The notes below the pieces were generated by a model. That model was not told the DNA's origin. It saw nothing but the letters and a program-made list of their open reading frames with translations, and made no database searches. Positions 13,329-32,451 of a stretch of 64,000 nt of DNA are shown in pieces. The stretch comes from Lepidodermella squamata. Lineage: Eukaryota > Animalia > Gastrotricha. The stretch spans positions 1-64,000 of the forward strand of contig JBLDXI010000026.1 in NCBI GenBank assembly GCA_047495785.1. The letters run 5' to 3'. The first letter of the stretch is position 1. Every line of letters starts with the position of its first letter. The position numbers were made by a program, and so were the translations under genes.

Positions 13329-15824
13329 TTAGTAGTGGCTAGAGACATCTATAGTTAATGTCGGCTTTCTCATGAGTGGGAGAAGCCACGTCAATCCTGT
13401 CGTGGCTGAAATCAAGCACGAAGTGAATCCTATCGCCATTTCTTGATCGACAAGATTGCGCACAACCACGACAATCAATATCGTGGCGACAAAAATTGTA
13501 GCAGCATTAACGACACCGAGACTGATGTACGTGAACTCGGGAATATTCCTCGAGCCACCAAGATGACGTAGCTTGAATATAGTAATAGCACCTACCAGCA
13601 GAAGCGCAATATTGATAGTAACAATCGTCATAATCCAAGCTAAATTCGAGGAAGATTGGCATGTTGTAAAAACAGTTTCAACCAGGGTGTCTTGAATGAC
13701 GTCGTAAACAGGCTTCTGCTTTGCCTGAAAGCATGTAAAATTGTCACCGATAATCCATATGGTGACAATCCAAGCAACTACGACTACGAAGGCAATAACA
13801 GCTTTCGCACAAGACTTGTCTATGATCTCAATATACAGGTTTTGTATCCCTGAGTTCCCACCTGAGAATGATGATGACGCGTGAAATGATGCTGACAACC
13901 TATGACTCTCACTTCGATGCATATATTGTTGGCGACGCTGATTCGCGACGTGTTGCGGGGCCATTCTAGACTTTTGACCCTTGTTACTGTTAACAGAGTT
14001 GTTACCTTGTCGAGGAATAGGAGAGGCCCCTATTGAGAATCTTGACCCAGCTATTGTACCCCTCTTGAGCATGTACGTTACTGATCTCAGGCAAACAACC
14101 GCATTGATAAGAGAGAACCCTATCGATACTAGAACAATCCTTGAGATCCAAATAGCCTTAGTTCCGTAACTCAGATCAGCCGTGAAGAATAATCCGCCAA
14201 TGTTGAGAGCAATCCCTCCAACATATCCCAAGATTTTTGTCAAAAACATTCCTCTTTCTCCGTAGTCGCTGAAAAAGGCAGATCTTATTAGTATAGCTGT
14301 GCCCAGAAGGTGAATACATGACGATAGTATTGCTAGAACAAGAACTACTATGAAGACTTCACTAGAGACACCCATAAGTTCGATTAGCTGCAACTTCGAA
14401 TCTCGAGGAGGTAACCCTTCAGCAGTTTGCCACACCGGATCACGAACTTTCTTCATCCAGTAGTGCTTGTAGTGATATCCATTCGTTTTAGGATGCTGAT
14501 AAACGTTGTTGATATACTGTAAACGGTCTTTGGGCGTCCAGTAGCTGACAAACTGAATGTCACCATCGACTTCACCAACATCGTTGTAGCGCATCCTGCC
14601 CATCCGCAATCCCAAATAGTCCACAGCTATTGCAGTCTTGTTTACTACATCTGCGACGATATCAGGCCGGTCTCTCATGTTCCTCAGAGACATGTTTTGA
14701 GCTTTCAGAGCCAAGTCTGCATTATGAAGAGTTATCAGGCCCTGCATCATGGTGTCATGGCAGAGCAGCCTTCGCTCGTAGTCATACACCTTTTCGCGCG
14801 TATTGTTTGTGTATCGGTCGTAGATTGCATCGAATTCGGTCAAGTCGTAGCCTAGAACAGTTTTCACACTCGGTTCATTCGTTGTCATAATTGGAGCGAC
14901 CCAGTATGTGTACTTCATCTGTTCGATCACAACGTTCCGAAAACATCCGGGGCTTATTTCGTTGGCCAGTCCTAAGGGGTCTGCATAGCCAACCCCCAGA
15001 AGTATCAAAATGTACCTGGGACCAGTTAATCCAAACTTGTAAGTCTGACATAGGAACTTCCAGATCCAGCCAGCACTTGAAGATGACAGCACTATGATTC
15101 GGACATCGCTGCTCAACAGGTTACGCATCGAATCGTCGTCGACATCGAGGACAATGTCGAAGAACCCAATTGAAATGTTAGTCTGGTCCAATGCTACCCT
15201 GAGAAGAGCCGTTGCTGTTGTATAGTCGAAAACGCTCGCAGCGTTAGTCAGGATGCCCATACGCTTCCAACCACCTGATTCTGCGACGAAACGAGTGATG
15301 GCATACGAAAGAACACGGCCAGTTGATCGCATCATATACAGGTTAGGGTATAGAGTGCGATCTGAGAGGAATGGCGCGGCACAAGCGATACTCACACTAA
15401 CCGAGTAGAGATGCTTCAAAGGGGGAACCATAGCTTTGCATCCAGTGGACATCTGAGGTCCGACGATCACAGGTGACTGGTAAGTATTGTTCCGATCAGA
15501 ACCTTCGTAACTTCGACGGAAAGACGCTGCTAAGCGGGCCGCGTGAACTCCGGTGTTCTCGTCTTCAAATTGAATCTGTGCACGACGTTTGAATATATTT
15601 AGTTGTTCAGTTCATGAAACTACCTCAATGTTGTAGTCGGGAAGAATATCCGAGCGACTGTTTGCTATGTCGACAGCGATTTGAGAGGCCGTGCGGCATG
15701 CATATCCATTGGACGGAGCATTGCCCGTGAATGACATCATCTCTAGCACTACCATTTTATACGGCTTGGTAGCAAGAATTACAGCAAAGTTGCATATCAT
15801 CAGCGAACTACGGAGAAGCATCAT
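13329..15824 (-). CDS. GABA-B-like class C GPCR, copy A (exons 15824-15624, 15575-13329)
   Basis: Signal peptide. Venus-flytrap motifs AVDIANSRSDILPDY, IVGPQMSTGC and LSDRTLYPNLY. No Cys-rich domain. Seven hydrophobic helices. Confidence 0.88.
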
Positions 15825-16597: not shown

Positions 16598-19094
16598 TCA
16601 TAAACTGTTTATCGAATTCAGGGGGGCTGGCTTAATCAAGGGCCATATCCAAGTGAGACCTGTCGTCGATGAAATCATACAGGCTAGGAAGCCGATAGCC
16701 ATTTCTTGATTTATAAGGTCGCCAACGACCAATACAATTAAAATAGTGGCCAGAAACGTGGAGATGGTATTCACTAAACCCAGAATCAGGAAAGTAAACT
16801 GCGGAATCGTTCTCGGGCCCCCAAGGTGACGTAGCCTGAACGCAACAAAAGCCGCGGCCATCATCAGCAAAACATTCATCAGAACAAGTGCCATGATCCA
16901 AGCAATGTTCTTTGTAGATCGGCAAGAAGTGTAAACGGTCTCAAAGATAGTGTCTTCAATTAAATCGTAGACAGGCGGCTTGATAAGTCTAAAGCAGCGG
17001 AAATTATCGCCAGTCAGCCAAGCTGTAAGGATCCAGCCAGTTATTCCCGTAAAAATGATGGAATTCTCAGCGCAGGATTTATCAGCTGATTCTATCGTAA
17101 CGTCAGCAACCACTGACGAAGTTGGTTCCGAAGAGTAACGAGCGGGCGTAACGCTGATGAGAATCGGCGTTGAAGATTTTCCGCCTTGAGGATACACGGA
17201 AAGGGTTTTGCTTCGCGGCCTTTCGAATATCCTTTCGCTGTCGACGGTCTTAACTTGTCTGGCTATCGTTGAACGGACCGCTGTCGGCAACCTCGGGCGA
17301 ATATGAAAGCTGCTTCTGAGCATAAAAGAAATTGGTCTAAAACATACTACAGCATTTAAAATGGAGAAGCCTGTTGAGACAAGTACGATTCTCGCAATCC
17401 ACAAAGGCCTTGCGATATCAGTAGTATCAGCGGTAAACAGGACACCACCAACATTCAGAGCAATCCCACCAACATGACCCATAAGTTTCGATATACTCAT
17501 GTCTGCTGAAACTAGGCTGCTGGAGGCTAAAGACCTAATTATTAGAACAATGCCAGTAAAATGTATCGATGACGATATGATTGCGAGAGCAAGGACGATA
17601 AAGAAAAATTCTCTAGGCACCATGGCGTACTTCATGACAAGACGAATACTGTCCCTAGGAGGTCGCTGATCAGCAGTTTCCCAAACTGGCTCGCGAATTT
17701 TCTTCATCCAGTAGTGCTTGTAGTGATAACCATTTGTGTTAGGATGCTGATAGACGTTGTAGATGTACTGCAAACGGTCTTTGGGCGTCCAGTAGCTGAC
17801 AAACTGAATGTCACCATCAACTTCACCAACATCGTTGTAGCGCATCCTACCCATCCGCAATCCCAAATAGTCCACAGCTATTGCAGTCTTGTTTACTACA
17901 TCTGCGACGATATCAGGCCGGTCTCTCATGGTCCTCAGCGACATATTTTGAGCTTTCAGAGCCAAGTCTGCATTATGAAGAGTTATCAGGCCCTGCATCA
18001 TGGTGTCATGGCAGAGCAGCCTTCGCTCGTAGTCATACACCTTTTCGCGCGTATTGTTTGTGTATCGGTCGTAGATTGCATCGAATTCGGTCAAGTCATA
18101 GCCAAGAACAGTTTTCACATTCGGTTCATTCGTTGTCATAATCGGTGCGACCCAGTATGTGTACTTCATCTGTTCGATCACAACGTTCCGGAAACAGCCA
18201 GGGATCACCTCGTTCGCCAGACCCAAAGGATCCGCATAACCGACTCCAAGAAGGATTAAAATGTACCTGGGTCCGGTTATTCCAAACTTGTAAGTCTGAC
18301 ATAGGAACTTCCAGATCCAGCTAGCACTGGAGGATGACAGAACTATGATTCTGACGTCGCTACTCAACAGGTTACGCATCGAATCGTCGTCGACATCGAG
18401 GACAATGTCGAAGAATCCGATGGAAATGTTAGCCTGGTCCAATGCAACCCTGAGAAGAGCAGTCGCTGTTGTGTAGTCGAAAACACTCGCAGCGTTAGTC
18501 AGGATGCCCATGCGCTTCCAACCTCCTGATTCTGCCACGAAACGAGTGATGGCATACGAAAGAACACGGCCAGTCGAGCGCATCAGGTACAGATTAGGGT
18601 ATAGAGTTCGATCTGAAAGGAATGGCGCGGCACAGGCGATACTCACGCTAATCGAATTCATGTGCTTCAATGGCGGAGCTAACGCCTTGCAACCAGTTGA
18701 CATTTGTGGCCCAACGATTACCGGCGACCGAATTGTATTGATCCGGTCTGAGTTTTCAAAGCTACGCAGAAATGCACCAGCAGCTCGTGCCGCTTGTACT
18801 CCTGTGTTTTCATCTTCGAATTGGATCTAAACAACAGTAATTCATCCCACGCTTTACGATTTCGCAATCACTAACCTCGAGTTGATAGTCAGGAAGGATG
18901 TCCGATCGGCTGTTAGCAATATCGACGGCAATTTGTGACGCGGTACGGCAGGCGTAGCCATTTGCAGGCGCATTTCCGGTGAAAGACATCATTTCTAATA
19001 TCACCATCCGATAAGGTTTCATCATGTAAGTCGATGAAGTTGCTACGTCTGAAATCATAGCAAAGCAAAGAATTGCCGCGTAGTACTCAGGCAT
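16598..19094 (-). CDS. GABA-B-like class C GPCR, copy B (exons 19094-18876, 18826-16598)
   Basis: Tandem paralog of copy A with the same single intron, a near-identical flytrap domain and 7 TM helices. Confidence 0.88.
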
Positions 19095-20784: not shown

Positions 20785-21506
20785 TTTGATTTTTTTTAAA
20801 TATTTTTCGAAAGTTTTTGAATTTTCAATAATTTGTATGCTCGTCAACCGAATTTACTCCGGCTTAATTTTTCATTTTTGGTTGAATACTGCAATGAGAG
20901 ATAATTTCGGAGAAAACCATGTTTTTCGAGTGCATGGAAAGTAAATAAAATCATTTGTTACATCGTATGATGAATCATCATTGTCCCCAGCTAACATGCT
21001 AGCATCTTAATTTTTGATGCAATCGAAATTTGGGCACGGAGCCTATTTTGAATGTTAGGAACGGCGGCGGCTTACGCGGTCGAGCTCAGCAATGTCCTCG
21101 TTTCGGTCAAACCATATCCTAAATCACCAAAAATTCCATTATTCCACGGTATTCGCAATCACAATTCGCCGTTCTCATAGCCGCAAAAGAAACCCGTTCT
21201 CGAATATTAATCACATTTTTGGAAAACCAAAACCGTAATGTGTATGTTAGTTGGATGGCTTTAAATGTGAACGTGAAATTATCTTCTGATCCCCATTTTT
21301 CAAATCAATTTTTTTATTATGGATTTTCGCGCGTCATTGGTCAAATCTGGTCCTTTTTTATTGGAGACCCAACGTCTGATATAGAGAACAATGAATGAAC
21401 AATGAATGACTGTCCAATATCTCATATTTTCGAGGGCAGAAGCTAGGCGGGAAACAGCCTCGTGGCGACCACACCCTCTCAACCACGCCCTCTTTTTTCT
21501 TCTAGG

Positions 21507-21673
21507 CACGTGCCAACATGCGGCAATGAAAATGAAGCAATAATTGAAGCGCAGCTGAACACGTCTCAGTCAAACAATCAACTATCGCATTGTGAACGTC
21601 CACGTGATCACGTGAACATGACTCAAAAGCAACTTTTTCTAACCCACACGCCTCAACATCTGACTATATAAAT
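21507..21673 (+). promoter_or_regulatory. Candidate promoter: three CACGTG E-boxes and a TATA box
   Basis: CACGTG at 21507, palindromic CACGTGATCACGTG at 21601-21614, TATATAAAT at about 21666, ATG at 21739. Confidence 0.5.
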
Positions 21674-21738
21674 ATCGTCCTAGTTTCTCGCAATCCCCTG
21701 TTACTTATATATCGAAGAGTAAAATTCTACGCAAAAAA

Positions 21739-22866
21739 ATGATCGGTCTAACTCTAGCTACTATTCTATGCTTTTTGCCAGCTGTCATCCTTGCTGATCG
21801 CTTGCGGCTTCAAGTTGAACTCGAAAAGTCACCAAAGTCCAACCCGCAAAGCTCTTGCCAATCGCGTCAACTGTTCGAAAAGTCCAAACTTAAATACTCG
21901 GTCGTTAACGTCACCGCCCCATGGTCGGTTGATCACGTTCGAGTTTGGACTTCAACCCACGCTAAGGCTCAGTTTGAACAGCTGCTGGACCAGCGGGTGG
22001 TTTGCAGTCAATTAACTGGCTCGAAGAAACTGCGAGAAGTCCTTCAAGAGTACCAAAGTCAGCAATGCTGGACCTTGCTCTACGGCGATGCTGTTCGCGA
22101 GGTGTTGCGAGGCGATGAGTCCGGTTTAACGAGCGATTCTGTCGAAATTGAAATCGCCTGCGGTGAGACATCGATCTATTCCAAGCTGAAATGGGGCCAG
22201 GTGATAACAGGCGATGGCTCAGCTCTCGGTTTCTCCGCGAATTCTCTCGCTTACGACTGGTTTCAACACGTTATCTACGACTTCACTCCGGATAAATCTG
22301 GCTTCGAAGACGTTTGCAAGAAGGAGTATCGAATTCCGGTTCCTGAAAGCAAGTGGGCGATTTGGGCGAAGAACGGCGCTGTCGCTGAGAAGTTGATTCA
22401 ATTCTACTACTTCAGATCAAATGGCTACCTGGAGAAGAGTAATGCAGAACAGTTTTTGCTCGATCAATTCAAAGAAACTATTCAGGACCAAAGCAAGCAA
22501 GCCGGTCTTCAAATCGCCTATTGCCGATACGCGATTTCGGGATGGTTCAATGAAACTAGCCAACAATGCGTGACATGGAGTGACCGCTGCGTGGCGACGA
22601 ACAAAATCGACGAGCTTATCCGCGACTTGAATCAGGGAACGCTCAATTCACGGATGACGCCGTACAATCTATTCAAGACTAAAATGCCTTGCGTTTACAC
22701 CAAGTCGTACACAGAACCGCTTGGCCAGTGCCTAACGCCACCGGTTGCGTTGGCTGATGATCAAGCGACGAATCAAGCGCCGGCGATGTCGATTCTCGAA
22801 ACGATCGCGACAATCGTCACAGCTCTTTCATGCTCGTTTGTCGTCGTTAACTTGATGCTGATTTGA
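21739..22866 (+). CDS. Intronless secreted, probably GPI-anchored protein with degenerate class II nucleotidyltransferase (CCA-adding/poly(A) polymerase)-like motifs
   Basis: 375-aa ORF. Signal peptide MIGLTLATILCFLPAVILA, terminal hydrophobic tail, many Cys. Motifs LYGDAVREVLRG, GFSANSLAYD...IYDFT...GFEDV....RI and KLIQFYYF. The ORF is solid; the fold call is by eye. Confidence 0.75.
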   Translation: MIGLTLATILCFLPAVILADRLRLQVELEKSPKSNPQSSCQSRQLFEKSKLKYSVVNVTAPWSVDHVRVWTSTHAKAQFEQLLDQRVVCSQLTGSKKLREVLQEYQSQQCWTLLYGDAVREVLRGDESGLTSDSVEIEIACGETSIYSKLKWGQVITGDGSALGFSANSLAYDWFQHVIYDFTPDKSGFEDVCKKEYRIPVPESKWAIWAKNGAVAEKLIQFYYFRSNGYLEKSNAEQFLLDQFKETIQDQSKQAGLQIAYCRYAISGWFNETSQQCVTWSDRCVATNKIDELIRDLNQGTLNSRMTPYNLFKTKMPCVYTKSYTEPLGQCLTPPVALADDQATNQAPAMSILETIATIVTALSCSFVVVNLMLI

Positions 22867-23541
22867 AGAATCTTGCCACAATTTATGCCACAATTTTTGA
22901 AAATAGACTTTGTGTTTGAAAATTAAATAAATAAATTTTTGTATTATTGAGTCTTTTGTGCAATTTTTCAGCTATGTTTCCAAGAAAAACCATACTATTA
23001 TTCCAAGCTTCCGAGCAGTTCTTCATACAGGATTTCCAAGCTTTGATTTTTCTGAATCTTCCAAGTAATTTAGCGGCTATATTATATTGGATCATTCTTC
23101 GCAAATGGAGTAAAATTTTACGAGAAATTAGATCGTAAGACTATGCTTCGATAAGACGCAGAATATTTTATAATCCTTTACTGTTGCTGAGAAAATGGGC
23201 TGTGGCTTCAAATTTCACCTGCGAAAATTGCGATTATAAAATAATGTAATTTTTTGATCAGTTCAACTTGGCTGTTTTTACATAATTGCTTGCGGTTATT
23301 CTGGGGCTAGAAATCTCGCCAAATAAAGTATAAAACTTCGGCAAAAACTCGGCATAACCAGTGTCCAAAACGGTAAGACTTTTCTGCGACCTTGAGGGAT
23401 TTCCCGTCCTTCAAGGAGGATATGCATCCCGGAGGTCTGAAACTGGTCTAATAGGACATACCTAGTGAAAGCCAAGAATCAAATCAAGAAAATTTTCACA
23501 TGTCGCTCATTTTATTACGATAATTTCATGAGAATGAATCA

Positions 23542-25122
23542 TCAAATATTTTGAGACAATTCTTTAATCACTTTCCACGCGAAATCAATGTCAGCATTCG
23601 TAGATTGTGATGAACAAATCGCCAGTCTGAGCATGTAAACACCCCTGAAAAAAACACGAAATATTGTTTCTAAATAGTTCAAAATTATCTATGGAAACTT
23701 ACTTGACCTTCGTTGGAACAAGATGGATCCTGTTATCAGCCAAAATTGCTTTGTACAGCGATTCAGTCGCCTGGTTACACCGAGCCAAGTCATCGCATGG
23801 CTTCAATCGGAAGCAAACCAGACCGAGTACGACCTTGGCTGTAATTTCGAATCTGTTATCTGCTTCGATCAATTGTTTGAAATACATCGCTTTGTCAACC
23901 ATTTCTCGAATGTGCTCTTGAATTTTCCGAACGCCGTAGCTTCGAAGAACGAAAAACAGCTTTAACGAGCGAAATTTCCTGCCAAACGGAATTTGCCAGA
24001 AACGAAAATCTGGCATCGAGCAATTTTCATGGCTATTCCGCAGATAAACCGGATCGATTTTGAAAGCCTCACTGACCAAGGTCCCATCTCTGAACCACAT
24101 CGCCGAGCAATCAAAGTTGACCAACATCGATTTGTGCGGGTTGAAATTGAACGAATCCGCAGATTCAATGCCGTTGAGGAGCGGTCGAAATTCCGGGCAG
24201 CAAAACGCGCTGCCGGCATAGGCGGCATCGACATGCAGCCAAATCGGAGTGTTCAAGTTGGATTTCGAGTTGAACTCATCGATAACTCGGCTAATTTCAG
24301 CCAAATTATCGAAAGCGCAAGTATTAGTCGTGCCCAAAGTGGCGCAGACGAAAAATGGAATCAGCCCTGATTTCTCAGCATTTTCAATCGCCAGCCTCAA
24401 CGCTTCGCCTCTCATCGCATTATCGGAATCGGTTTCGACATTGACGAAATGTTGAATCGCTCCAAACATTCCAGCTCGTTCAACTGTTAGATGAGCCTGG
24501 TCTGAGGTGAATGCCACCAATCGGTCTAAAGTTTGGCCGGTTGTCATTCCGAGAGATTTCTTGCAGTCTTCAAAAGCTCGATTTCGAGCTGCACTCAATG
24601 CTGTTAAGGTGGCTTCACCTGCCGTGCCATGGATTACCCCGCCACCCTTGCCTTTCGACGAGAATAGGAAATGATCCGGTAGTTCCAACAGTTTAGCTAA
24701 CCAATCCATCATAACTGTCTCCAGTTCGGTACTGCTAGGGTTCGATGCCCAAGTGAAACCCATTGAACCAATCGCATTCCTGAAAAAAATAATTAATTAC
24801 CCATAATTAATTAAGGAGGCTGGACCCACGAAAGCATGTCAGCTATCATTGAAGGATAAGAAGTCGCCATTGCGTAATATCCAAAAAATTTAGGCGAGTG
24901 CCAATGAGCAGCGCCGGGTAGTATTGCCGAGTTGACATCTGCGAGAATATCGTCGAACGCCTCTGAATTTTGAGGCGCTTCGGGTGACAACAGCGGAGGT
25001 AGGAACCCTGGTTTAAATTCGGTTGAAGAAGGAAAAGCAGGTCTATCTCGGATATTGTCGAAATAGTTAGCGATGAAGTCTACCATCGCCTTGCCACGGC
25101 TTCTAAACTCCTCGCTATTCAT
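23542..25122 (-). CDS. Ddc: Aromatic L-amino acid decarboxylase (Ddc-like), 3 exons
   Basis: MNSEEFRSRGKAMVDFIANY, HWHSPKF, GFTWASNPSSTELE, SDQAH, WLHVDAAYAG and the PLP lysine motif NPHK. WQIPFGRKFR has Gly as in DDC, not Ser as in HDC/TDC. Orthology not tested. Confidence 0.88.
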
Positions 25123-26970: not shown

Positions 26971-28306
26971 ATGTCTACTACCAGAACTGCAGGAGATCAG
27001 TATAAAAGGAATTAGCAATCGATTAAAATAGTTAAATATGATTTTTCCAATTCAGGGAGTTGGGTCTAGTCAACGGTGCACCGAAACAAAGAAAAAAGAG
27101 CGAACAATGCGACGTCATTTGTTGGAAAACGGTCACCGGATCGGTCATCTTCATCGCCTTGGCTTGTGTCATTATTCTTGGAGTCTACATTTTCCATCAA
27201 AGAGTACTTTTTCGGTTCCATCTTTGACCTAATATTAATAATTGATGTTATAATAGGCTATAATCAATCGCTTGGAGCAGCCATCGGAACCCTCAGCTGC
27301 TGCTGCATTGGAATGCGAAGATCCAATGGTTATTAGTCCCCTACCTGAAGCTGCGATCACCTGCGAATTCAACGTTGCAGAAGAAACGGCCGGGTTTCTA
27401 ACCTTCGACAACGGATCTGTCATTACGACTGGCAAGAATTTTCCTCAAAATACAGTGCTAATTCTACACTGCCCAAAGGACCACCGGGTCGTAGATGGTC
27501 GATCGTTTTCGAGCTGTAGAAAGAGTGGAGAATTCGCGCCGAAACTCGGCACTTGTCTATCACCGAGTCGATTGGAGGATGAACAAAAGAAGCTGGCGAA
27601 ATCAGCGGCTACGGGAGATTCAACTGAATTGGCTAGGTTGTTATCCCTCGGCTATCTCAACGTCAACTGGCGAGATCCTTCCGAGATCGATGAATGCTTT
27701 CTATGGCCTGTAAGCTCTGGCACCGCGCTACATCGAGCTGTAGATTGCAGCCGCTCGCCAACAGCTATTTTACAGCCATTGATCGACGCTGGGGCAGATG
27801 TTGATTCTGCTGAGACAACAAATAACGCAAGGCCTCTTCATTTCGCGGCAGCTCTCGGAAATTCGGCTACGGTTGACCTGCTCTTGAAGAAGGGCGCGCA
27901 TGTCAACGCGACAATGAAAGATGGGACATCGGCGCTGTGGCACGCCTCGGAACAGGGCCATCTATCAGTGGTGAATCTTCTCATCTCGAGTAGGGCTGAT
28001 TTTTACGCAACAACCTGGGGTGGGGGCTATTCGCCACTTCATGCCGCGGCAGCTAATGGTCATCTCGAGGTGGTGAAAGCATTGTTGGACGGCAATAAAT
28101 CCGACAAAAATTACATCAATTTCATAGCGGAATCTGGGAAAAGTGGCTCGCCGCTTATTGAAGCAGTTCTGAAAAATGAACTGGAAATTGTTCTGGAACT
28201 GGTGAGGCGAGGCGCAGATGTCAACCTGCAAAAAATTGATGGCAGTACAGCAATTTCTATCGCACAGCAAAAAGGATACGATGAAATTCTGCAAATTTTA
28301 CAGTGA
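26971..28306 (+). CDS. Type II membrane protein with Sushi/CCP domain followed by about 6 ankyrin repeats, 3 exons
   Basis: Exons 26971-26999, 27056-27203, 27257-28306. TM VTGSVIFIALACVIILGVYIF. Sushi C...LHCPKDHRVVDGRSFSSCRKSGEFAPKLGTC. ANK motifs TALHRA, PLHFAA, SALWHA, SPLHAA. Confidence 0.8.
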
Positions 28307-28729
28307 CAGTTATACCGTTGGGTAGAGGGGGAATTTTGGAAAAAACCATGTTTTAATTAAAAATCAGTCGTGATTCAGAAATCGATGATGTTTTGGTACA
28401 AAGGTTTGTGTAATGAGCCCCGATTTATCGGTGACTTTTGGCGGTTTTAGGATTTTTATACCTGATTTTGGCAATCGAAAACATTGATGGCTAATGTTGG
28501 ACAATTAGCGGGCACTTCTGGACACGCTCATTGACAAACGAGATGGCGATGCGAATTTTCAGTTTTTTGAGCTTTAGGTCAAATTTGGAAAAAATACATT
28601 TTTGTGCTGCCGCAACTATTTTGTAATTTGGCAATTTCGGAAGGAAATTCAACTAATTTTATCAAATTAAACCTACCTACCGAGCGAATATTCCATCTTT
28701 TATCCGTGATTTAACCGAAGAAATAAAAA

Positions 28730-28999
28730 ATTTCTGGAGAAAACCCGGACGTTTCAATTTCGGTATAACCGGTTGTATAACCGGTTCGGTAATTTTCGGT
28801 ATTTTACCCGGTTGGACCAATTTTCTCCGGACATTTTTAATTCCATTAACAAGCGATTACCTGATTACAATTCTTTTGATTTTTTTAATTTTTCTAAAAC
28901 TTTTCTGGCCATGAGATGTGACTTCGTCTCTCATTTTAAAGTTTCTGAACCCTTTTCCGTGTATTTTCTTTGCTTGCGTTAATTATGAGACACGCTGTA
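28730..28999. mobile_element. Partial MITE, same family as 57042-57514
   Basis: Shares GGTTCGGTAATTTTCGG.ATTTTACCCGGTTGGACCA and GTGACTTC.T.TCTCAT with the 57-kb element, and ends ...GAGACACGCTG-TA. Left end not resolved. Confidence 0.6.
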
Positions 29000-29435
29000 T
29001 AAACAGTCCAAAATTAGTCGATGTTCACCTGAACTTCAGGTCAATCCCCTGCAAAAAATAATCGTTGGATCTGAATTTTTCTTTCGATAACTGAGAGAGC
29101 AAGCCATTAGGATACCCATGCCAATTTTTGTCCTAAAATGATTATTTGTTTGTGAGATAAGAGGACTAAGAGAAAGATAAATCGACATTTGAGTTGCCTT
29201 GCTTATAAAAATTCTTAAAAATCAAGTATTGCTCCAATCACCTTGGGACCTGTGCCTTTCGAACGCTCAAAAGACGGGGAATTTTATGTAAAAAAAACCT
29301 GTGTTTTTATCATACAGCATTACAAAGTTATTCACCTGCAAAGCCAAAGTGTCCAAAATTTATCATGCGCTACGGTACAATTCAGCAAATCGTTTTATTC
29401 ATTCAGAATGAAAAAATACAGATTAGTAATTAAAA

Positions 29436-30473
29436 TCAAAAGCGAGCGCCTTTTTGTTTTAGAAAGTTGACAACTTTATATTGTTTCGCTTGAGTAGCTA
29501 GCATCAACGGGGTCTGGTTGTTTTTGTTGCGCGCCTCCAGCATCAACTGATCACGACACCGGTCCAACATGAATTCAACAACACGAAGATTGCCTTTAGC
29601 GGCTGCTAAATGTACGGCTGAATTTCCCATAGCATCATTCGCGAATAAGAAGACATTTCGTTTCGCCAGATAATCAACACACATCCAGTGGCCCTTTTCG
29701 GCCGCATTTAGTAGGGGCGTCTTGCCGTTAGCATCCTTCGACTCGGCTGAAATCTGGCACGTTTCCAACAGGTATTTCAACAGCTCCAAATGACCACTCG
29801 CAGCCGCTATGTTAGCTATAGTATCTCGTAATTTCGACTCGGATTCTAGGAGTAATTTTACGAGATCCAACTTGCCGGCTTCCGTTGCTTTCTGTAACAA
29901 AGCCGCTGTGTCTAGGCCGCTTAACTTCGCCCCTCGTTGAAGCAGCAATCGAACAGCATCGACGTGATTGTGTTCGGCTGCGAACATCACCGGAGTTTTC
30001 TTAGCACGACTCACGTGATTTATGTCGAATAGCGTAGGCGGCTCAAGGTCAAGGAAATAGGTCAAAATTTCCACGTGGCCACAAGCCGCTGCTAAATGAA
30101 GGGCGCTGTAGCCAAGCTCGTAGAGTCTAGGACTTATCCTAGGGTCGTAATCCAGCGGCCTTAAATCTGCACCGGAGTCGACCAGAAATTTGACGAGCGG
30201 CAAATTTCCAAGGGCGACTGCTTGGAGGACCGGCGTTTGTTCCGGGAATCCGACCGGTAAAGGCTGCCAAGTTACATGGTGGATATCGGCCTTTTTCTCC
30301 TGAACCAAATACTTGACCAGGGTTAACTTCCCGCTTGAAATTGCTGCATTAAGAAGTGTAGCTCGATTCACGCGGTGTTCTTCTTCCAAAAGATCGGGAT
30401 CACTTTTCAAAATTTTCTTTACATCTTTCAAGTGGCCTTTCGCAGCAGCATCGTGAAGTTGCACCAGTATCAT
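29436..30473 (-). CDS. Intronless ankyrin-repeat protein
   Basis: About 9 ANK repeats (SALHLAAACGH, TPVMFAAEHNH, TPLLNAAEKGH). Start taken at MILVQLHDAA. Confidence 0.85.
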   Translation of the reverse strand: MILVQLHDAAAKGHLKDVKKILKSDPDLLEEEHRVNRATLLNAAISSGKLTLVKYLVQEKKADIHHVTWQPLPVGFPEQTPVLQAVALGNLPLVKFLVDSGADLRPLDYDPRISPRLYELGYSALHLAAACGHVEILTYFLDLEPPTLFDINHVSRAKKTPVMFAAEHNHVDAVRLLLQRGAKLSGLDTAALLQKATEAGKLDLVKLLLESESKLRDTIANIAAASGHLELLKYLLETCQISAESKDANGKTPLLNAAEKGHWMCVDYLAKRNVFLFANDAMGNSAVHLAAAKGNLRVVEFMLDRCRDQLMLEARNKNNQTPLMLATQAKQYKVVNFLKQKGARF

Positions 30474-31332
30474 TGAAGCATAAAAAGCAGTTTTGATAGA
30501 GAGTTTTTTCACACGCACCGGGGGGCCGTATCTCAGGCTGTATAGCACAGGTATAATAATGTGATATTGCCTAAAACAAGCAGAAAAACAACGTTTTATT
30601 ACAATATTTACTAAGTGATTCACTCAAAGGCATATTACATCAGCAATTTTATCAAAAAACTTGGCGGTCGAAAATATAATCTCGCAGTATCTGCGAAAAA
30701 TCGTTATCTCTATTATAGTACTAGAATTATACATGCATCCAGCAGCCAGCTCCAGAAGGGCATTTCAGCTGTGATATGATAATCGATGCGATAATGCGCA
30801 TCGCTTTTATGCATTATTTGTGGTATAGGGATAAAAAAAATTGAATTTTTAAGAGATGGCACAATAATTTTTTGTACTATCCTCTAATTGGCAAAACGCG
30901 ATCGAATGCGGTTCTCCTTCAAGGAAATTCAGAACGCCGGAAGACTCTTCTGGTAAATTCCCAATCTATACAATATCAAAGGAAATTGCGGTGTGGTGCA
31001 AGGGTGCACGCAAAACTTTATTGGTTTCGCGATGACTGGAGAAGGAAAAAAATTTATACAACACATCGTTTTACATATACACAAAACATTATTTTCTTCA
31101 TATCCCATTCGAGTCCTTCGCTTTATTGCGCCCCCTGAATCACCGATCGATACAAGTAATTGATGAATGGCACGGCGAGTACAACTACTACCACAGCGGC
31201 TGAACCACGCTGCATATTTAAAGAAATAATGATGAATAAAAAATGTCGCGCAATATAAATTTGCACAAGGGGCTGGAATTATTTCCGTGAACAAAACCCG
31301 CCGCCGCATGGGAGCTGTTGCCGGAAAAAGCA

Positions 31333-32451
31333 TCATTCAACGCCGCCTCTAAATTTCAACAAATTCGCAGCATAAATTTGATTTCGAGCCGAGGCCACAG
31401 ATAAAGCGGTTTGCTGTTGGTTATTCCGGCGGTTAATCATTTCCTTTGATATTCGAAGTATATTTGCCATTATTTGATTATGGCCATTCGCAGCAGCTAA
31501 ATGAAGCGCAGTGTCCCCGTTGCAGTCGGACGTAGTAACATCCGCAGAATTTTCAATAAGGTGACTGACCACGTCAAGATGACCATTCTCGGCTGCGCTC
31601 ATCAGCGCTGATTTCCCATTCGAACCCACGGAATCAATGTCGAGATGACATTTCTTCAACAGAAATTTCACTGTTTGAAGCTGACCACCAGCAGCGGCTG
31701 AATTCAGCAGAAGATCCCCATTTGAATTTGTAGAACTCAACAGTTCAGGTTTAAGATGAAGAATAATTTTCAGCAATTCTAAATAGCCGGCTGCAGCCGC
31801 CTTATGAGCAACACTGTCGAAATCGAACCCATCGAGATCGATTCCTTTTTGTTGAATAAGGAAGGAAACGACTTCCAGATGACCATTTTGGCCAGCCAGA
31901 ATAATCGCGGTGTAATTACTCGCGTTTCGAAGATTAATTTCTGCCCCATTTTGAAGGACCAAGAGATGAACTATGCTGAGATGACCATTAGATGATGCAA
32001 CCATTAGAGGGGTTTCGACAATTTTCGAGCCGACCACTCCGTTCAATGATTCAGGATTAAGTCGTAATAGGTAATCGGCAATGTCCAAGTGGCCACATCT
32101 AGCGGCAAAGTGAAGAGGAAGATGCCGGGTTGAACTGTCTTCCGACATAGGAACGGCCCCATTTTCCACGAGGAGTTTAACAATTTGAAAATGACCAAGG
32201 GTTGTAGCAAAATGTACAGCAGTTTGGCCGTTCGATCTTTTCGTTAAATCGGCTCGTTTTTCCGTAACTAGGAATTTGACCAGAGGTAAACTCCCACTTT
32301 TTATTGCCCAAAATAACACTGTGTCGCTAGCTTCCAGCAAATCGGGCTTCTTTTTCAGGATTTTCCTAACCTGAGCAAGCCGTCCAGCTGTAGCAGCCTC
32401 ATACAAGGCCGTAAGGTCGCGATTTTCAGGTGACATGAGTTCAAAAGCCAT
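31333..32451 (-). CDS. Intronless ankyrin-repeat protein, tandem paralog
   Basis: 372 aa, about 10 ANK repeats. N-terminus VRKILKKKPDLLE matches VKKILKSDPDLLE in the neighbour. Confidence 0.88.
   Translation of the reverse strand: MAFELMSPENRDLTALYEAATAGRLAQVRKILKKKPDLLEASDTVLFWAIKSGSLPLVKFLVTEKRADLTKRSNGQTAVHFATTLGHFQIVKLLVENGAVPMSEDSSTRHLPLHFAARCGHLDIADYLLRLNPESLNGVVGSKIVETPLMVASSNGHLSIVHLLVLQNGAEINLRNASNYTAIILAGQNGHLEVVSFLIQQKGIDLDGFDFDSVAHKAAAAGYLELLKIILHLKPELLSSTNSNGDLLLNSAAAGGQLQTVKFLLKKCHLDIDSVGSNGKSALMSAAENGHLDVVSHLIENSADVTTSDCNGDTALHLAAANGHNQIMANILRISKEMINRRNNQQQTALSVASARNQIYAANLLKFRGGVE

What the first reader, a model, noticed from the sequence alone, without database searches (positions are those of the whole stretch)
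21739..22866. Cell-surface protein apparently built from a dead CCA-adding/poly(A)-polymerase fold
Seen: signal peptide, C-terminal hydrophobic tail without a cytoplasmic segment (GPI-like), N-glycosylation sequons and many Cys. In order it carries LYGDAVREVLRG...DSVEIEI, GFSANSLAYD....VIYDFT...GFEDV....RI and KLIQFYYFRSNGY. Known: class II nucleotidyltransferases have VGGxVRDxLLG...DxD, RRDFTxNALAYD....IxD..GxxDL...IR and RxLRxxRF...GF, and are intracellular RNA enzymes. Here GG->GD, RD->RE, DxD and RRD are degenerate and the middle of the head domain is much shortened. Inference: an RNA-enzyme fold exported and repurposed as an extracellular pseudoenzyme (nucleotide/RNA binding or receptor-like); the intronless gene may be retro- or horizontally derived. 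This is my best candidate for an undescribed system here.
Basis: partly seen in the sequence, partly recalled or inferred. Interest (0 to 1): 0.82.

Follow-up and report, generated by a model that had tools for sequence, protein, structure and literature searches.

The report
Dead surface-anchored CCA-enzyme-like protein
This intronless animal gene encodes a probably GPI-anchored, disulfide-rich surface protein that is a catalytically dead, fast-evolving copy within a so far unnamed eukaryotic family of secreted proteins built on the fold of the enzymes that add CCA or poly(A) tails to RNA.

Summary
Window 21739-22866 (+) is an intact 375-aa ORF with a signal-peptide-like start, a hydrophobic tail running to the last residue, two N-glycosylation sequons, 12 Cys and the quoted motifs.

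Homology to class II nucleotidyltransferases is shown indirectly. The ORF itself hits nothing in Pfam. A profile of it and two paralogues finds 348 cluster representatives, and 46 of the top 50 match PolyA_pol (PF01743). An HMM built only from foreign homologues hits the ORF at E=7e-44. The AlphaFold model (pLDDT 79.8) matches only CCA-adding enzymes, poly(A) polymerases and TENT5 (Z 12.7-6.9; next hit 3.5).

Most of the family has a signal peptide, conserved Cys and intact GGxVRD/DxD, and many members have GPI-like tails. The window copy has lost GG, RD, the first D of DxD, two core strands, the motif-B carboxylate and two conserved basic neck residues. It has a branch about three times the median. 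It still looks transcribed and constrained (haplotype dN/dS about 0.17).

Nothing points to retro- or horizontal origin, and nucleotide binding is doubtful. The scan had already flagged the intact paralogue on other DNA (s1-384491).

The parts
21665..21674 (+). TATA-like box (TATATAAATA), about 65 nt upstream of the ATG
   Evidence: Read from the sequence. The 5'-most contig of the RNA-like run X3 starts at 21717.
21739..22866 (+). Complete intronless coding sequence, 375 aa plus stop
   Evidence: Contigs of runs X1 and X3 cover only about 21717-22900, with no joints.
21739..21795 (+). Signal-peptide-like N-terminus (residues 1-19, inferred cleavage ILA|DR)
   Evidence: Hydrophobic core read from the sequence. 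48 of 71 full-length-like relatives have the same feature. SignalP was not run.
21796..22038 (+). Family-specific N-terminal module (residues 20-100) with conserved C40, the PW motif and S72
   Evidence: Aligned to family HMM positions 6-105. Model pLDDT is 82-95.
22039..22338 (+). Degenerate, shortened PolyA_pol-type head domain (residues 101-200)
   Evidence: HMM alignment with family positions 148-183 missing. Structural matches to CCA-adding enzymes, poly(A) polymerases and TENT5 span model residues 65-322.
22075..22155 (+). Remnant of motif A: GD for GG, RE for RD, SxE for DxD (residues 113-139)
   Evidence: Column-by-column comparison with 68 homologues.
22180..22191 (+). Site of the deletion (about 36 family positions). 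Lost: two core strands, the HIG motif, the conserved D181 and the Cys pair C149/C158
22228..22257 (+). Remnant of motif B (GFSANSLAYD). The family's E, which sits at the D of RRD, is G164 here
   Evidence: Alignment of the family profile to CCA-adding enzyme 6ibp.
22390..22428 (+). Neck remnant KLIQFYYFRSNGY (family consensus K..YRFWKLR.KGF). The conserved R and K are Q221 and Y224 here
22429..22731 (+). Helical, Cys-rich C-terminal module (residues 231-331) with conserved C262 and C277 and sequon N271
22732..22791 (+). Low-confidence linker with small-residue candidates for a GPI attachment site (TNQAPAMS)
   Evidence: pLDDT is below 50 at residues 333-350. Most nonsynonymous haplotype differences fall here.
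22792..22863 (+). C-terminal hydrophobic tail (residues 352-375) ending the protein, read as a GPI-signal-like tail
   Evidence: Similar tails occur in 25 of 71 relatives and in the closest foreign relative. Haplotype changes in the tail are conservative (M350L, I359V).
22926..22935 (+). Overlapping AATAAA polyadenylation signals
   Evidence: Read from the sequence. RNA-like coverage ends near 22900.

Best explanation
The gene encodes a secretory-pathway glycoprotein that is most likely attached to the cell surface by a GPI anchor. Its core is a degenerate class II nucleotidyltransferase (PolyA_pol) head domain plus a helical neck, flanked by family-specific Cys-rich modules. It is one of three paralogues in this genome. 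They belong to an unnamed eukaryotic family of secreted or GPI-tailed, disulfide-rich PolyA_pol-like proteins of about 350-400 aa. These proteins lack the tRNA-binding body and tail domains, and most keep the metal-binding GGxVRD/DxD site.

The paralogue on contig C7 is soluble and has intact motifs. The one on C60 is tailed and half degenerate. The window copy is tailed and fully dead. It has lost the second Gly, the RD Asp, the first Asp of DxD, two core strands with the candidate third carboxylate and a Cys pair, the motif-B carboxylate, and two conserved basic neck residues.

Shown: the homology, the fold, the loss of catalytic residues, the accelerated evolution, purifying selection, and transcript-like coverage. 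Inferred: the protein no longer transfers nucleotides. It acts as a non-catalytic surface binding or scaffold module, for example one that holds or competes for the still unknown ligand or partner of the intact secreted paralogue. This would resemble other dead-enzyme ectodomains.
For: The three paralogues are found, and their motifs are read. The paralogues give sub-threshold, colinear PF01743 hits. The profile of the paralogues finds 348 representatives, 135 of them at E<=1e-10. Of the top 50 members, 46 hit PF01743, best E 9.6e-11. One tailed member (P0005) passes the Pfam cut-off at 30.5 bits. The family profile hits PDB CCA-adding enzymes and poly(A) polymerases at 1e-9 to 1e-6. An independent HMM hits the window ORF at 7.4e-44 and shows a 36-position gap. 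The AF2 model has pLDDT 79.8 and pTM 0.78. By VIA-align, ranks 1-9 are class II NTases or TENT5, Z 12.7 to 6.9; rank 10 is another TENT5 chain at 5.4, and the first unrelated fold scores 3.5. Foldseek and the Atlas agree. In the tree, the three own copies plus P0001 form a clade with support 96. The end branches are 2.43 (window) and 2.33 (C60), against 0.85 (C7) and 0.55 (P0001). The closest foreign relative has a signal peptide, intact motifs and a GPI-like tail. Family-wide signal peptides and tails are counted. Runs X1 and X3 cover only the transcript-sized interval, while the DNA run X2 covers the flanks too. The second haplotype differs by in-frame 3-nt indels. The haplotypes differ at 21 synonymous and 14 nonsynonymous codons, giving dN/dS of about 0.17.
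Against: No predictor of signal peptides or GPI signals was available. The hydrophobic tail could instead be a membrane anchor or an ER/Golgi retention feature. Whether X1 and X3 are RNA runs is the tool's guess, supported only by their coverage pattern and short contigs. No ligand, partner or activity is known for any family member, so the binding or scaffold role is inference by analogy. The model's head domain is truncated, and residues 130-160 are only moderately confident. The haplotype dN/dS uses a partial list of differences pooled from three runs.
Confidence: 0.7

Rival explanations
1. The protein is still an enzyme and uses non-canonical residues for metal binding and catalysis. Candidates are E121, E136 and E138 in the stretch SVEIEI, together with the retained D181 and D191.
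For: Three Glu remain near the old DxDxE positions. The C60 paralogue carries ExE at exactly the DxD columns. The ORF is under purifying selection.
Against: With the conserved Cys as anchor, the first Asp of DxD is Ser. The GG turn that holds the triphosphate is GD. The strands carrying the candidate third carboxylate are deleted. The motif-B carboxylate and the conserved basic neck residues are gone. The branch is about three times the family median.
Confidence: 0.05
2. The gene is a decaying duplicate with no function of its own. It is still open and transcribed only because too little time has passed.
For: The branch is very long, nearly all family-conserved polar residues are lost, and there is an internal deletion.
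Against: The 375-codon frame is intact. The haplotype indels are in frame, and dN/dS is about 0.17, with nonsynonymous changes concentrated in the linker. The structural Cys, the signal peptide and the tail are kept. Coverage is transcript-like. The model is confident over most of the fold.
Confidence: 0.1
3. The protein is secretory but not GPI-anchored at the surface. It could be retained in the ER or Golgi lumen, or held by its C-terminal helix as a membrane anchor, and act there, for example as a regulator of a lumenal modification.
For: ATP and other nucleotide donors are available in the ER/Golgi lumen. NTase-fold enzymes such as fukutin and FKRP work in that compartment (PMC2794190). 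The GPI signal is only heuristic.
Against: The hydrophobic segment runs to the last residue with no cytoplasmic or basic stop-transfer residues. It is preceded by small residues and a short spacer, as in the tails of many relatives. There is no KDEL-type signal.
Confidence: 0.15

Closest known systems
Class II tRNA nucleotidyltransferases and bacterial-type poly(A) polymerases (Pfam PolyA_pol, PF01743; e.g. TRNT1, PcnB, PDB 6ibp, 3aql, 3h37, 1miv)
   Same: They share the Pol-beta-like head domain followed by a helical neck. The family keeps GGxVRD, DxD, the xxTxNxLxYD strand, the IID..G..D turn, IR and a basic R..(K/R)..R.(K)GF neck helix. Structural Z is 8.8-11.4 over 185-204 residues.
   Different: The new family has a signal peptide, about nine conserved Cys columns, frequent GPI-like tails, and its own N- and C-terminal modules. 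It has no PolyA_pol_RNAbd or body/tail domains. The two Arg of RRD and the ED of EDxxR are not conserved. The window copy additionally lacks the catalytic residues and two strands, and it does not reach any Pfam score. The genome has a separate canonical enzyme on contig C45.
TENT5/FAM46 non-canonical poly(A) polymerases (PDB 6jyj, 6w36)
   Same: This is the best structural match: Z 12.7, 229 residues aligned, rmsd 4.6. Both are compact two-lobed NTase-plus-helical-domain proteins of about 330 aa without tRNA-binding domains.
   Different: TENT5 proteins are cytosolic, active enzymes. Identity is 13% and there is no detectable sequence relationship here. They have no signal peptide, disulfide pattern or lipid-anchor signal.
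Stand-alone CCA-adding-enzyme head-domain proteins (PDB 2la3, Streptococcus NP_344798.1)
   Same: They have head-only class II architecture, Z 6.9 over 146 residues.
   Different: They are bacterial, cytoplasmic and of unknown function.
Fukutin / FKRP / LicD (NTase-fold phosphotransferases of the Golgi lumen)
   Same: This is a functional analogy only. They are Pol-beta-superfamily enzymes that work inside the secretory pathway on glycans, which shows that such a location is workable (PMC2794190).
   Different: They belong to a different family of the superfamily and are type II membrane proteins. No similarity was found here by sequence or by fold search.
Dead-enzyme ectodomains used as surface binding modules (e.g. 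cholinesterase-like neuroligins; from general knowledge)
   Same: The principle is the same: an enzyme fold kept on the cell surface after loss of its catalytic residues.
   Different: The fold is unrelated, and no partner is known for the present protein.

Membership tests
Class II nucleotidyltransferase (PolyA_pol head, PF01743) | Score above Pfam's gathering threshold (23 bits) | tested here: not met
   The window ORF has no hit even at E<=10. The paralogues score 17.9 and 12.1 bits. Family member P0005 scores 30.5 bits, and 46 of 50 members hit at E<=0.01.
Class II nucleotidyltransferase (PolyA_pol head, PF01743) | Pol-beta-like head domain fold with helical neck | tested here: met
   The AF2 model has pLDDT 79.8. 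The top nine VIA-align matches are all class II NTases or TENT5, Z 12.7-6.9, against 3.5 for the first unrelated fold. Every listed Atlas neighbour set carries PF01743. The sheet is shortened by a deletion.
Class II nucleotidyltransferase (PolyA_pol head, PF01743) | Motif A: GGxVRD followed by the catalytic DxD | tested here: not met
   The window has G116-D117, R120-E121 and S134/E136. The family has GG at 0.99/0.93, RD at 0.99/0.97 and DxD at 0.91/0.97.
Class II nucleotidyltransferase (PolyA_pol head, PF01743) | Third catalytic carboxylate on the following core strand | tested here: not met
   Family HMM positions 148-183, which include HIG and the conserved D181, are absent from the window protein. 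Which residue is the third carboxylate in this family is itself only inferred.
Class II nucleotidyltransferase (PolyA_pol head, PF01743) | Motif B RRD and motif D EDxxR (NTP ribose and base recognition) | tested here: not met
   The family has xxE-Y-T at RRD-F-T, and the window has G164 at that carboxylate. The ED of EDxxR is not conserved in the family. The conserved basic residues R252 and K255 are Q221 and Y224 in the window.
Class II nucleotidyltransferase (PolyA_pol head, PF01743) | RNA-binding body/tail domains (PolyA_pol_RNAbd and others) | tested here: not met
   No such Pfam domain is found in the window protein or in any of the 50 family members scanned.
New family: secreted Cys-rich PolyA_pol-like proteins (unnamed) | Full-length match to a profile built without the query | tested here: met
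   E=7.4e-44 over HMM positions 6-147 and 184-326. The window ORF forms a clade with its two paralogues and P0001, support 96.
New family: secreted Cys-rich PolyA_pol-like proteins (unnamed) | N-terminal signal peptide and conserved Cys framework | tested here: met
   The N-terminus is hydrophobic. Conserved C40, C110, C141, C193, C262 and C277 are kept, and the pair C149/C158 is lost together with the deletion. The signal peptide was judged by heuristic only.
GPI-anchored protein | Signal peptide plus a C-terminal hydrophobic segment ending the protein, preceded by small residues and a short spacer | tested here: inconclusive
   The pattern is present in the sequence and recurs in relatives. 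No GPI predictor was available.
GPI-anchored protein | Release from the membrane by PI-PLC, or detection of the lipid anchor | not testable with these tools
   This needs an experiment.

The most novel reading that the evidence does not exclude
The whole family is an unrecognised clade of ecto- or lumenal nucleotidyltransferases spread across eukaryotes. Its motif-intact members, soluble or GPI-anchored, would transfer a nucleotide or phospho-alcohol onto an extracellular or secretory-pathway substrate (RNA, glycan, lipid or protein). Dead GPI-anchored paralogues such as the window gene would have become receptors or regulators for that substrate or enzyme.
Probability: 0.3. Interest if true: 0.85.

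Novelty: new variant of a known kind. Interest (0 to 1): 0.66.

Why it matters
Class II nucleotidyltransferases are textbook intracellular RNA enzymes. This work finds a sizeable eukaryotic family, hundreds of 50%-identity clusters, that places the fold behind a signal peptide. The family stabilises it with disulfides, often adds a GPI-type tail, and drops the tRNA-binding domains while keeping the metal site. That implies a nucleotidyl- or phospho-transfer reaction in the secretory pathway or outside the cell that has not been described. This one genome offers a natural series: an intact soluble copy, a half-degenerate tailed copy and a dead tailed copy. That makes the question testable, because the intact copy can be assayed and the dead ones used as binding probes. 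For the window gene alone the significance is more modest: it is a clear, well-supported new example of a surface pseudoenzyme.

Tried and rejected
Direct searches with the ORF gave nothing.
- Pfam and NCBIfam returned no family.
- The PDB sequence search returned only noise, ribosomal eL20 at E about 2.
- The word-indexed protein search returned no hits.
- PADLOC returned nothing for the ORF or four relatives.
- The Atlas feature search gave only weak leads of 0.80-0.82, although they pointed to PolyA_pol/NTP_transf_2.

The first AlphaFold run used only the three paralogues and was unusable (pLDDT 40). It was replaced by the 150-row alignment.

Foldseek against the PDB gave no match at E<=0.001, best 3.8e-3. 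Its list is consistent with the verdict but would not carry it alone.

The word-indexed search with the 50-row profile found only 8 proteins, none with a useful name. Cluster look-ups gave only 'hypothetical protein'.

I could not name the source organisms of the family or of the window.
- The accession strings were not found in papers; one hit was a false match.
- Nematode SL1 is absent from the genome.

Literature searches for a secreted class II or PolyA_pol-head protein found only an unrelated Pandoravirus annotation paper and the 2009 NTase-fold classification.

The careful tree did not finish in time, so the quick IQ-TREE result is reported.

Retroposition or horizontal transfer was considered and rejected as unsupported. 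The nearest relatives are same-genome paralogues. The neighbours are ordinary animal genes of similar G+C. Family genes elsewhere are also single ORFs.

The spliced paralogue on C7 was handled exon by exon, as two rows or two queries. The joined protein was not built or searched.

No complex prediction was sent, because no specific binding pair is claimed.
Full report
1. WHAT IS THERE

Window 21739-22866 (+) is a single open frame of 375 codons starting with ATG.

- A TATA-like box lies at 21665-21674, and no ATG lies between it and the start codon.
- Two overlapping AATAAA signals lie at 22926-22935.
- The protein begins with a hydrophobic, signal-peptide-like stretch (residues 1-19, ...ILA|DR).
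- It ends with about 24 hydrophobic residues that run to the last residue, preceded by small residues (TNQAPAMS).
- It has two N-glycosylation sequons (N57, N271) and 12 Cys. Ten of the Cys lie between the two hydrophobic ends.

The signal peptide and the GPI signal rest on heuristics, because no dedicated predictor was available.

2. IS THE GENE REAL AND USED?

Three public runs hold the stretch, and I laid them on 21300-23300.

- Run X2 (longest contig 130 kb) covers the whole 2 kb, as DNA would.
- Runs X1 and X3 (longest contigs 6.9 and 4.5 kb) cover only about 21717/21945 to about 22900. They have zero depth on both flanks and show no joints or loose ends.
- That is the pattern of an unspliced transcript that starts shortly after the TATA box and ends at the poly(A) signal. 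The tool's label 'RNA' for these runs is only a guess.

All three runs also carry a second haplotype. It differs by 3-nt in-frame indels and by substitutions that change 21 codons synonymously and 14 non-synonymously. A rough Nei-Gojobori estimate gives dN/dS of about 0.17. The replacements cluster in the low-confidence linker (residues 320-350). Changes in the tail are conservative. The frame is under purifying selection.

3. RELATIVES

Direct searches with the ORF found nothing. This covers Pfam, NCBIfam, PDB sequences and the word-indexed protein search.

The assembly is 121 Mb in 151 contigs. It looks like an animal genome by its neighbouring genes: class C GPCRs, a DOPA-decarboxylase-like gene and ankyrin genes.

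The same genome holds two paralogues.

- C60 paralogue: an intronless ORF (L002:985-2097) with a signal peptide, YGPVVRD, ExE in place of DxD, DFTVDTMAYD and a hydrophobic tail.
- C7 paralogue: two exons split by a 53-nt GT..AG intron. It has a signal peptide and intact FGGPVRD...DLD. It has no tail, and an AATAAA signal follows the stop directly.
- These paralogues give sub-threshold but colinear hits to PolyA_pol. C60 residues 203-232 match profile positions 95-124 at E=0.004. C7 exon 1 residues 116-156 match positions 2-41 at E=0.26.
- I kept the two C7 exons as separate rows and queries throughout. The joined protein was not built or searched.

A profile of the three paralogues was searched against 1.84 billion cluster representatives.

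- It found 348 proteins at E<=1e-3, 135 at E<=1e-10 and 21 at E<=1e-30.
- Of the 50 best full-length-like members, 46 hit PF01743 at E<=0.01, the best at 9.6e-11. No other Pfam family appears.
- One tailed member (P0005) passes Pfam's own threshold.
- The 50-row family profile hits solved CCA-adding enzymes and bacterial poly(A) polymerases at 1.3e-9 to 1e-6. GGxVRD, DxD and the xxTxNxxA strand align in register.

To remove circularity I built an HMM from 68 foreign homologues only. It matches the window ORF at E=7.4e-44 (Z=1e6), C60 at 1.6e-48 and the two C7 exons at 4e-38 and 3e-19.

More distant hits of 500-970 aa are PolyA_pol-head proteins with other architectures, for example WWE plus PolyA_pol.

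The genome's canonical CCA enzyme lies elsewhere, on C45, scoring 97.9 bits.

4. STRUCTURE

With only the paralogues as alignment, the model was useless (pLDDT 40). With 150 rows it reached pLDDT 79.8 and pTM 0.78.

- An exhaustive VIA-align search of 48,161 PDB representatives gave TENT5B (Z 12.7), E. coli poly(A) polymerase (11.4), Thermotoga CCA-adding enzyme (10.9), Aquifex A-adding enzyme (10.5), further CCA-adding enzymes (9.3-8.8) and a stand-alone CCA head domain (6.9). Rank 10 is a second TENT5 chain (5.4), and the next hit, the first unrelated fold, scores only 3.5.
- Foldseek's list is weak (best E 3.8e-3) but contains almost only the same enzymes.
- Every listed neighbour set in the ESM Atlas carries PF01743, with TM 0.44-0.50 over 212-242 residues.

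The fold assignment stands.

5. WHAT THE FAMILY LOOKS LIKE, AND HOW THE WINDOW COPY DEPARTS FROM IT

The family consensus reads, in order:
- a signal peptide;
- a strand of the type R[IL]K[IL];
- an N-terminal module of about 90 residues with a conserved Cys and a PW motif;
- GGxVRD...DxDxE..C;
- two Cys, then HIG...D;
- LEYTxNxLxYD, then IID..G.GV.D.C..IRIP;
- W..W, then K..YRFWKLR.KGF;
- a Cys-rich helical C-terminal module.

Further family features:
- About nine Cys columns are conserved at 0.68-0.97.
- Of 150 listed hits, 119 have G[GA]x[VIL]R[DE] and 110 have the following DxD.
- Of 71 full-length-like members, 48 have a signal-peptide-like start. Twenty-five have a hydrophobic tail ending the protein, usually after a cluster of small residues.
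- The family lacks the two Arg of RRD, the ED of EDxxR and all RNA-binding body/tail domains.
- Family genes sit as single ORFs on eukaryotic contigs of up to 1.1 Mb. Their neighbours include TAF2, a mitochondrial carrier, MFS and C2H2 genes. In one case two family genes lie 6 kb apart.
- No source gives any member a name beyond 'hypothetical protein'.

The table gives family positions, their conservation in brackets, and the window residues.

| Family position | Window copy |
|---|---|
| G120 (0.93) | D117 |
| D124 (0.97) | E121 |
| D133 (0.91) | S134 |
| D135 (0.97) | E136 |
| Positions 148-183 (C149, C158, I169-G170, D181) | deleted |
| E197 (0.84), at the D of RRD | G164 |
| R252 (0.97) | Q221 |
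| K255 (0.94) | Y224 |

The structural residues are kept: six conserved Cys, N168, D181, G188, D191, R198-I-P, W206 and W209. C60 is intermediate (GP, ExE, with R and K kept). C7 is essentially intact.

In a quick maximum-likelihood tree, the three copies and one foreign sequence (P0001) form a clade with SH-aLRT support of 96. The end branches are 2.43 (window), 2.33 (C60), 0.85 (C7) and 0.55 (P0001), against a median of 0.87. The careful search did not finish.

P0001 comes from a contig with the same G+C as this genome. Read from its true start, it has a signal peptide, intact GGAVRD/DID and a GPI-like tail. Anchoring therefore predates the loss of the catalytic site.

6. MOST LIKELY MECHANISM

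Shown:
- the protein is a homologue of class II nucleotidyltransferases;
- it has secretory-pathway hallmarks;
- it lacks nearly every residue that the family and the superfamily use for metal and NTP binding, plus part of the catalytic sheet;
- it evolves fast yet is constrained;
- it appears to be transcribed.

Inferred:
- it is translocated, glycosylated and disulfide-bonded, and it receives a GPI anchor near N345-A347;
- it sits on the cell surface as a non-catalytic module;
- its former cleft and neck helices, or its family-specific modules, bind something related to the job of the intact secreted paralogue. That could be a substrate, a product or the enzyme itself.

Nucleotide or RNA binging as such is doubtful, because the conserved basic and acidic pocket residues are gone.

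For the intact members, the kept DxD/GG site argues for a metal-dependent nucleotidyl or phospho-alcohol transfer. The lost RRD/EDxxR motifs and tRNA-binding domains argue that the donor/acceptor pair differs from CCA addition. The acceptor could be a glycan, lipid, protein or extracellular RNA. Fukutin and FKRP show that Pol-beta-superfamily enzymes can work in the Golgi lumen (PMC2794190). This part is hypothesis.

7. RIVALS

- Residual catalysis through the remaining Glu residues: about 0.05.
- A decaying duplicate without function: about 0.10. This is contradicted by dN/dS, the in-frame indels and the kept Cys framework.
- A lumenal or helix-anchored location rather than a GPI-anchored surface one: about 0.15.

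8. COMPARISON WITH WHAT IS KNOWN, AND NOVELTY

The closest known relatives by sequence are PF01743 enzymes. The closest by shape is TENT5/FAM46. The window protein fails the family-defining catalytic motifs and the Pfam threshold. It is therefore a homologue and a pseudoenzyme, not a functional member.

I found no paper describing a secreted or GPI-anchored class II nucleotidyltransferase-like family. The library searched is incomplete, and UniProt and InterPro could not be queried.

I examined that locus here, and it agrees.

I rate the finding a new variant of a known kind: a new secreted architecture and family within a well-known superfamily, with the window gene as its dead, anchored offshoot.

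9. VERDICT

Interest is 0.66.

Noticed in passing
G000:C7:4200124-4201289 (L003 exon 1 1309-1887 -, exon 2 725-1255 -): This is a soluble paralogue with intact motifs: signal peptide, FGGPVRD...DLD, one 53-nt GT..AG intron, no hydrophobic tail, and AATAAA right after the stop. It is the best candidate in this genome for an active secreted enzyme of the family.
   Followed up: partly
G000:C60:232372-233481 (L002:985-2097 +): This is a second tailed, intronless paralogue with half-degenerate motifs: GP for GG, ExE for DxD, basic neck residues kept. Its branch is as long as the window copy's.
   Followed up: partly
P0049 (592 aa) and other long hits: Distant relatives carry the PolyA_pol head in other architectures, for example an N-terminal WWE domain. 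They have no PolyA_pol_RNAbd domain. This looks like an intracellular head-only branch of unknown function.
   Followed up: no
L014:9989-11167 and L014:16972-18141: Two family genes lie 6 kb apart on a 1.1-Mb eukaryotic metagenome contig. Local duplication of the family therefore also occurs in other organisms.
   Followed up: no
window 21792-22866: All three public runs carry a second haplotype that is locally up to about 9% divergent (18 differences in 201 nt at 22666-22866), with in-frame 3-nt indels. This suggests a highly heterozygous or hybrid/asexual source lineage.
   Followed up: partly
window 13329-15470 (-) and 16598-18703 (-): Two neighbouring long ORFs have an ANF_receptor ligand-binding region, and one also has a 7tm_3 domain. 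They look like tandem class C GPCR-like genes.
   Followed up: no
window 23699-24763 (-): A large exon of a pyridoxal-dependent decarboxylase (Pyridoxal_deC, E=5.5e-111) lies immediately downstream, convergent with the finding's gene.
   Followed up: no
window 27272-32451: A cluster of three ankyrin-repeat ORFs lies here, on both strands.
   Followed up: no
whole genome G000: The nematode SL1 spliced-leader sequence is absent with up to 1 mismatch. The genome has only one canonical PolyA_pol gene, on C45.
   Followed up: partly
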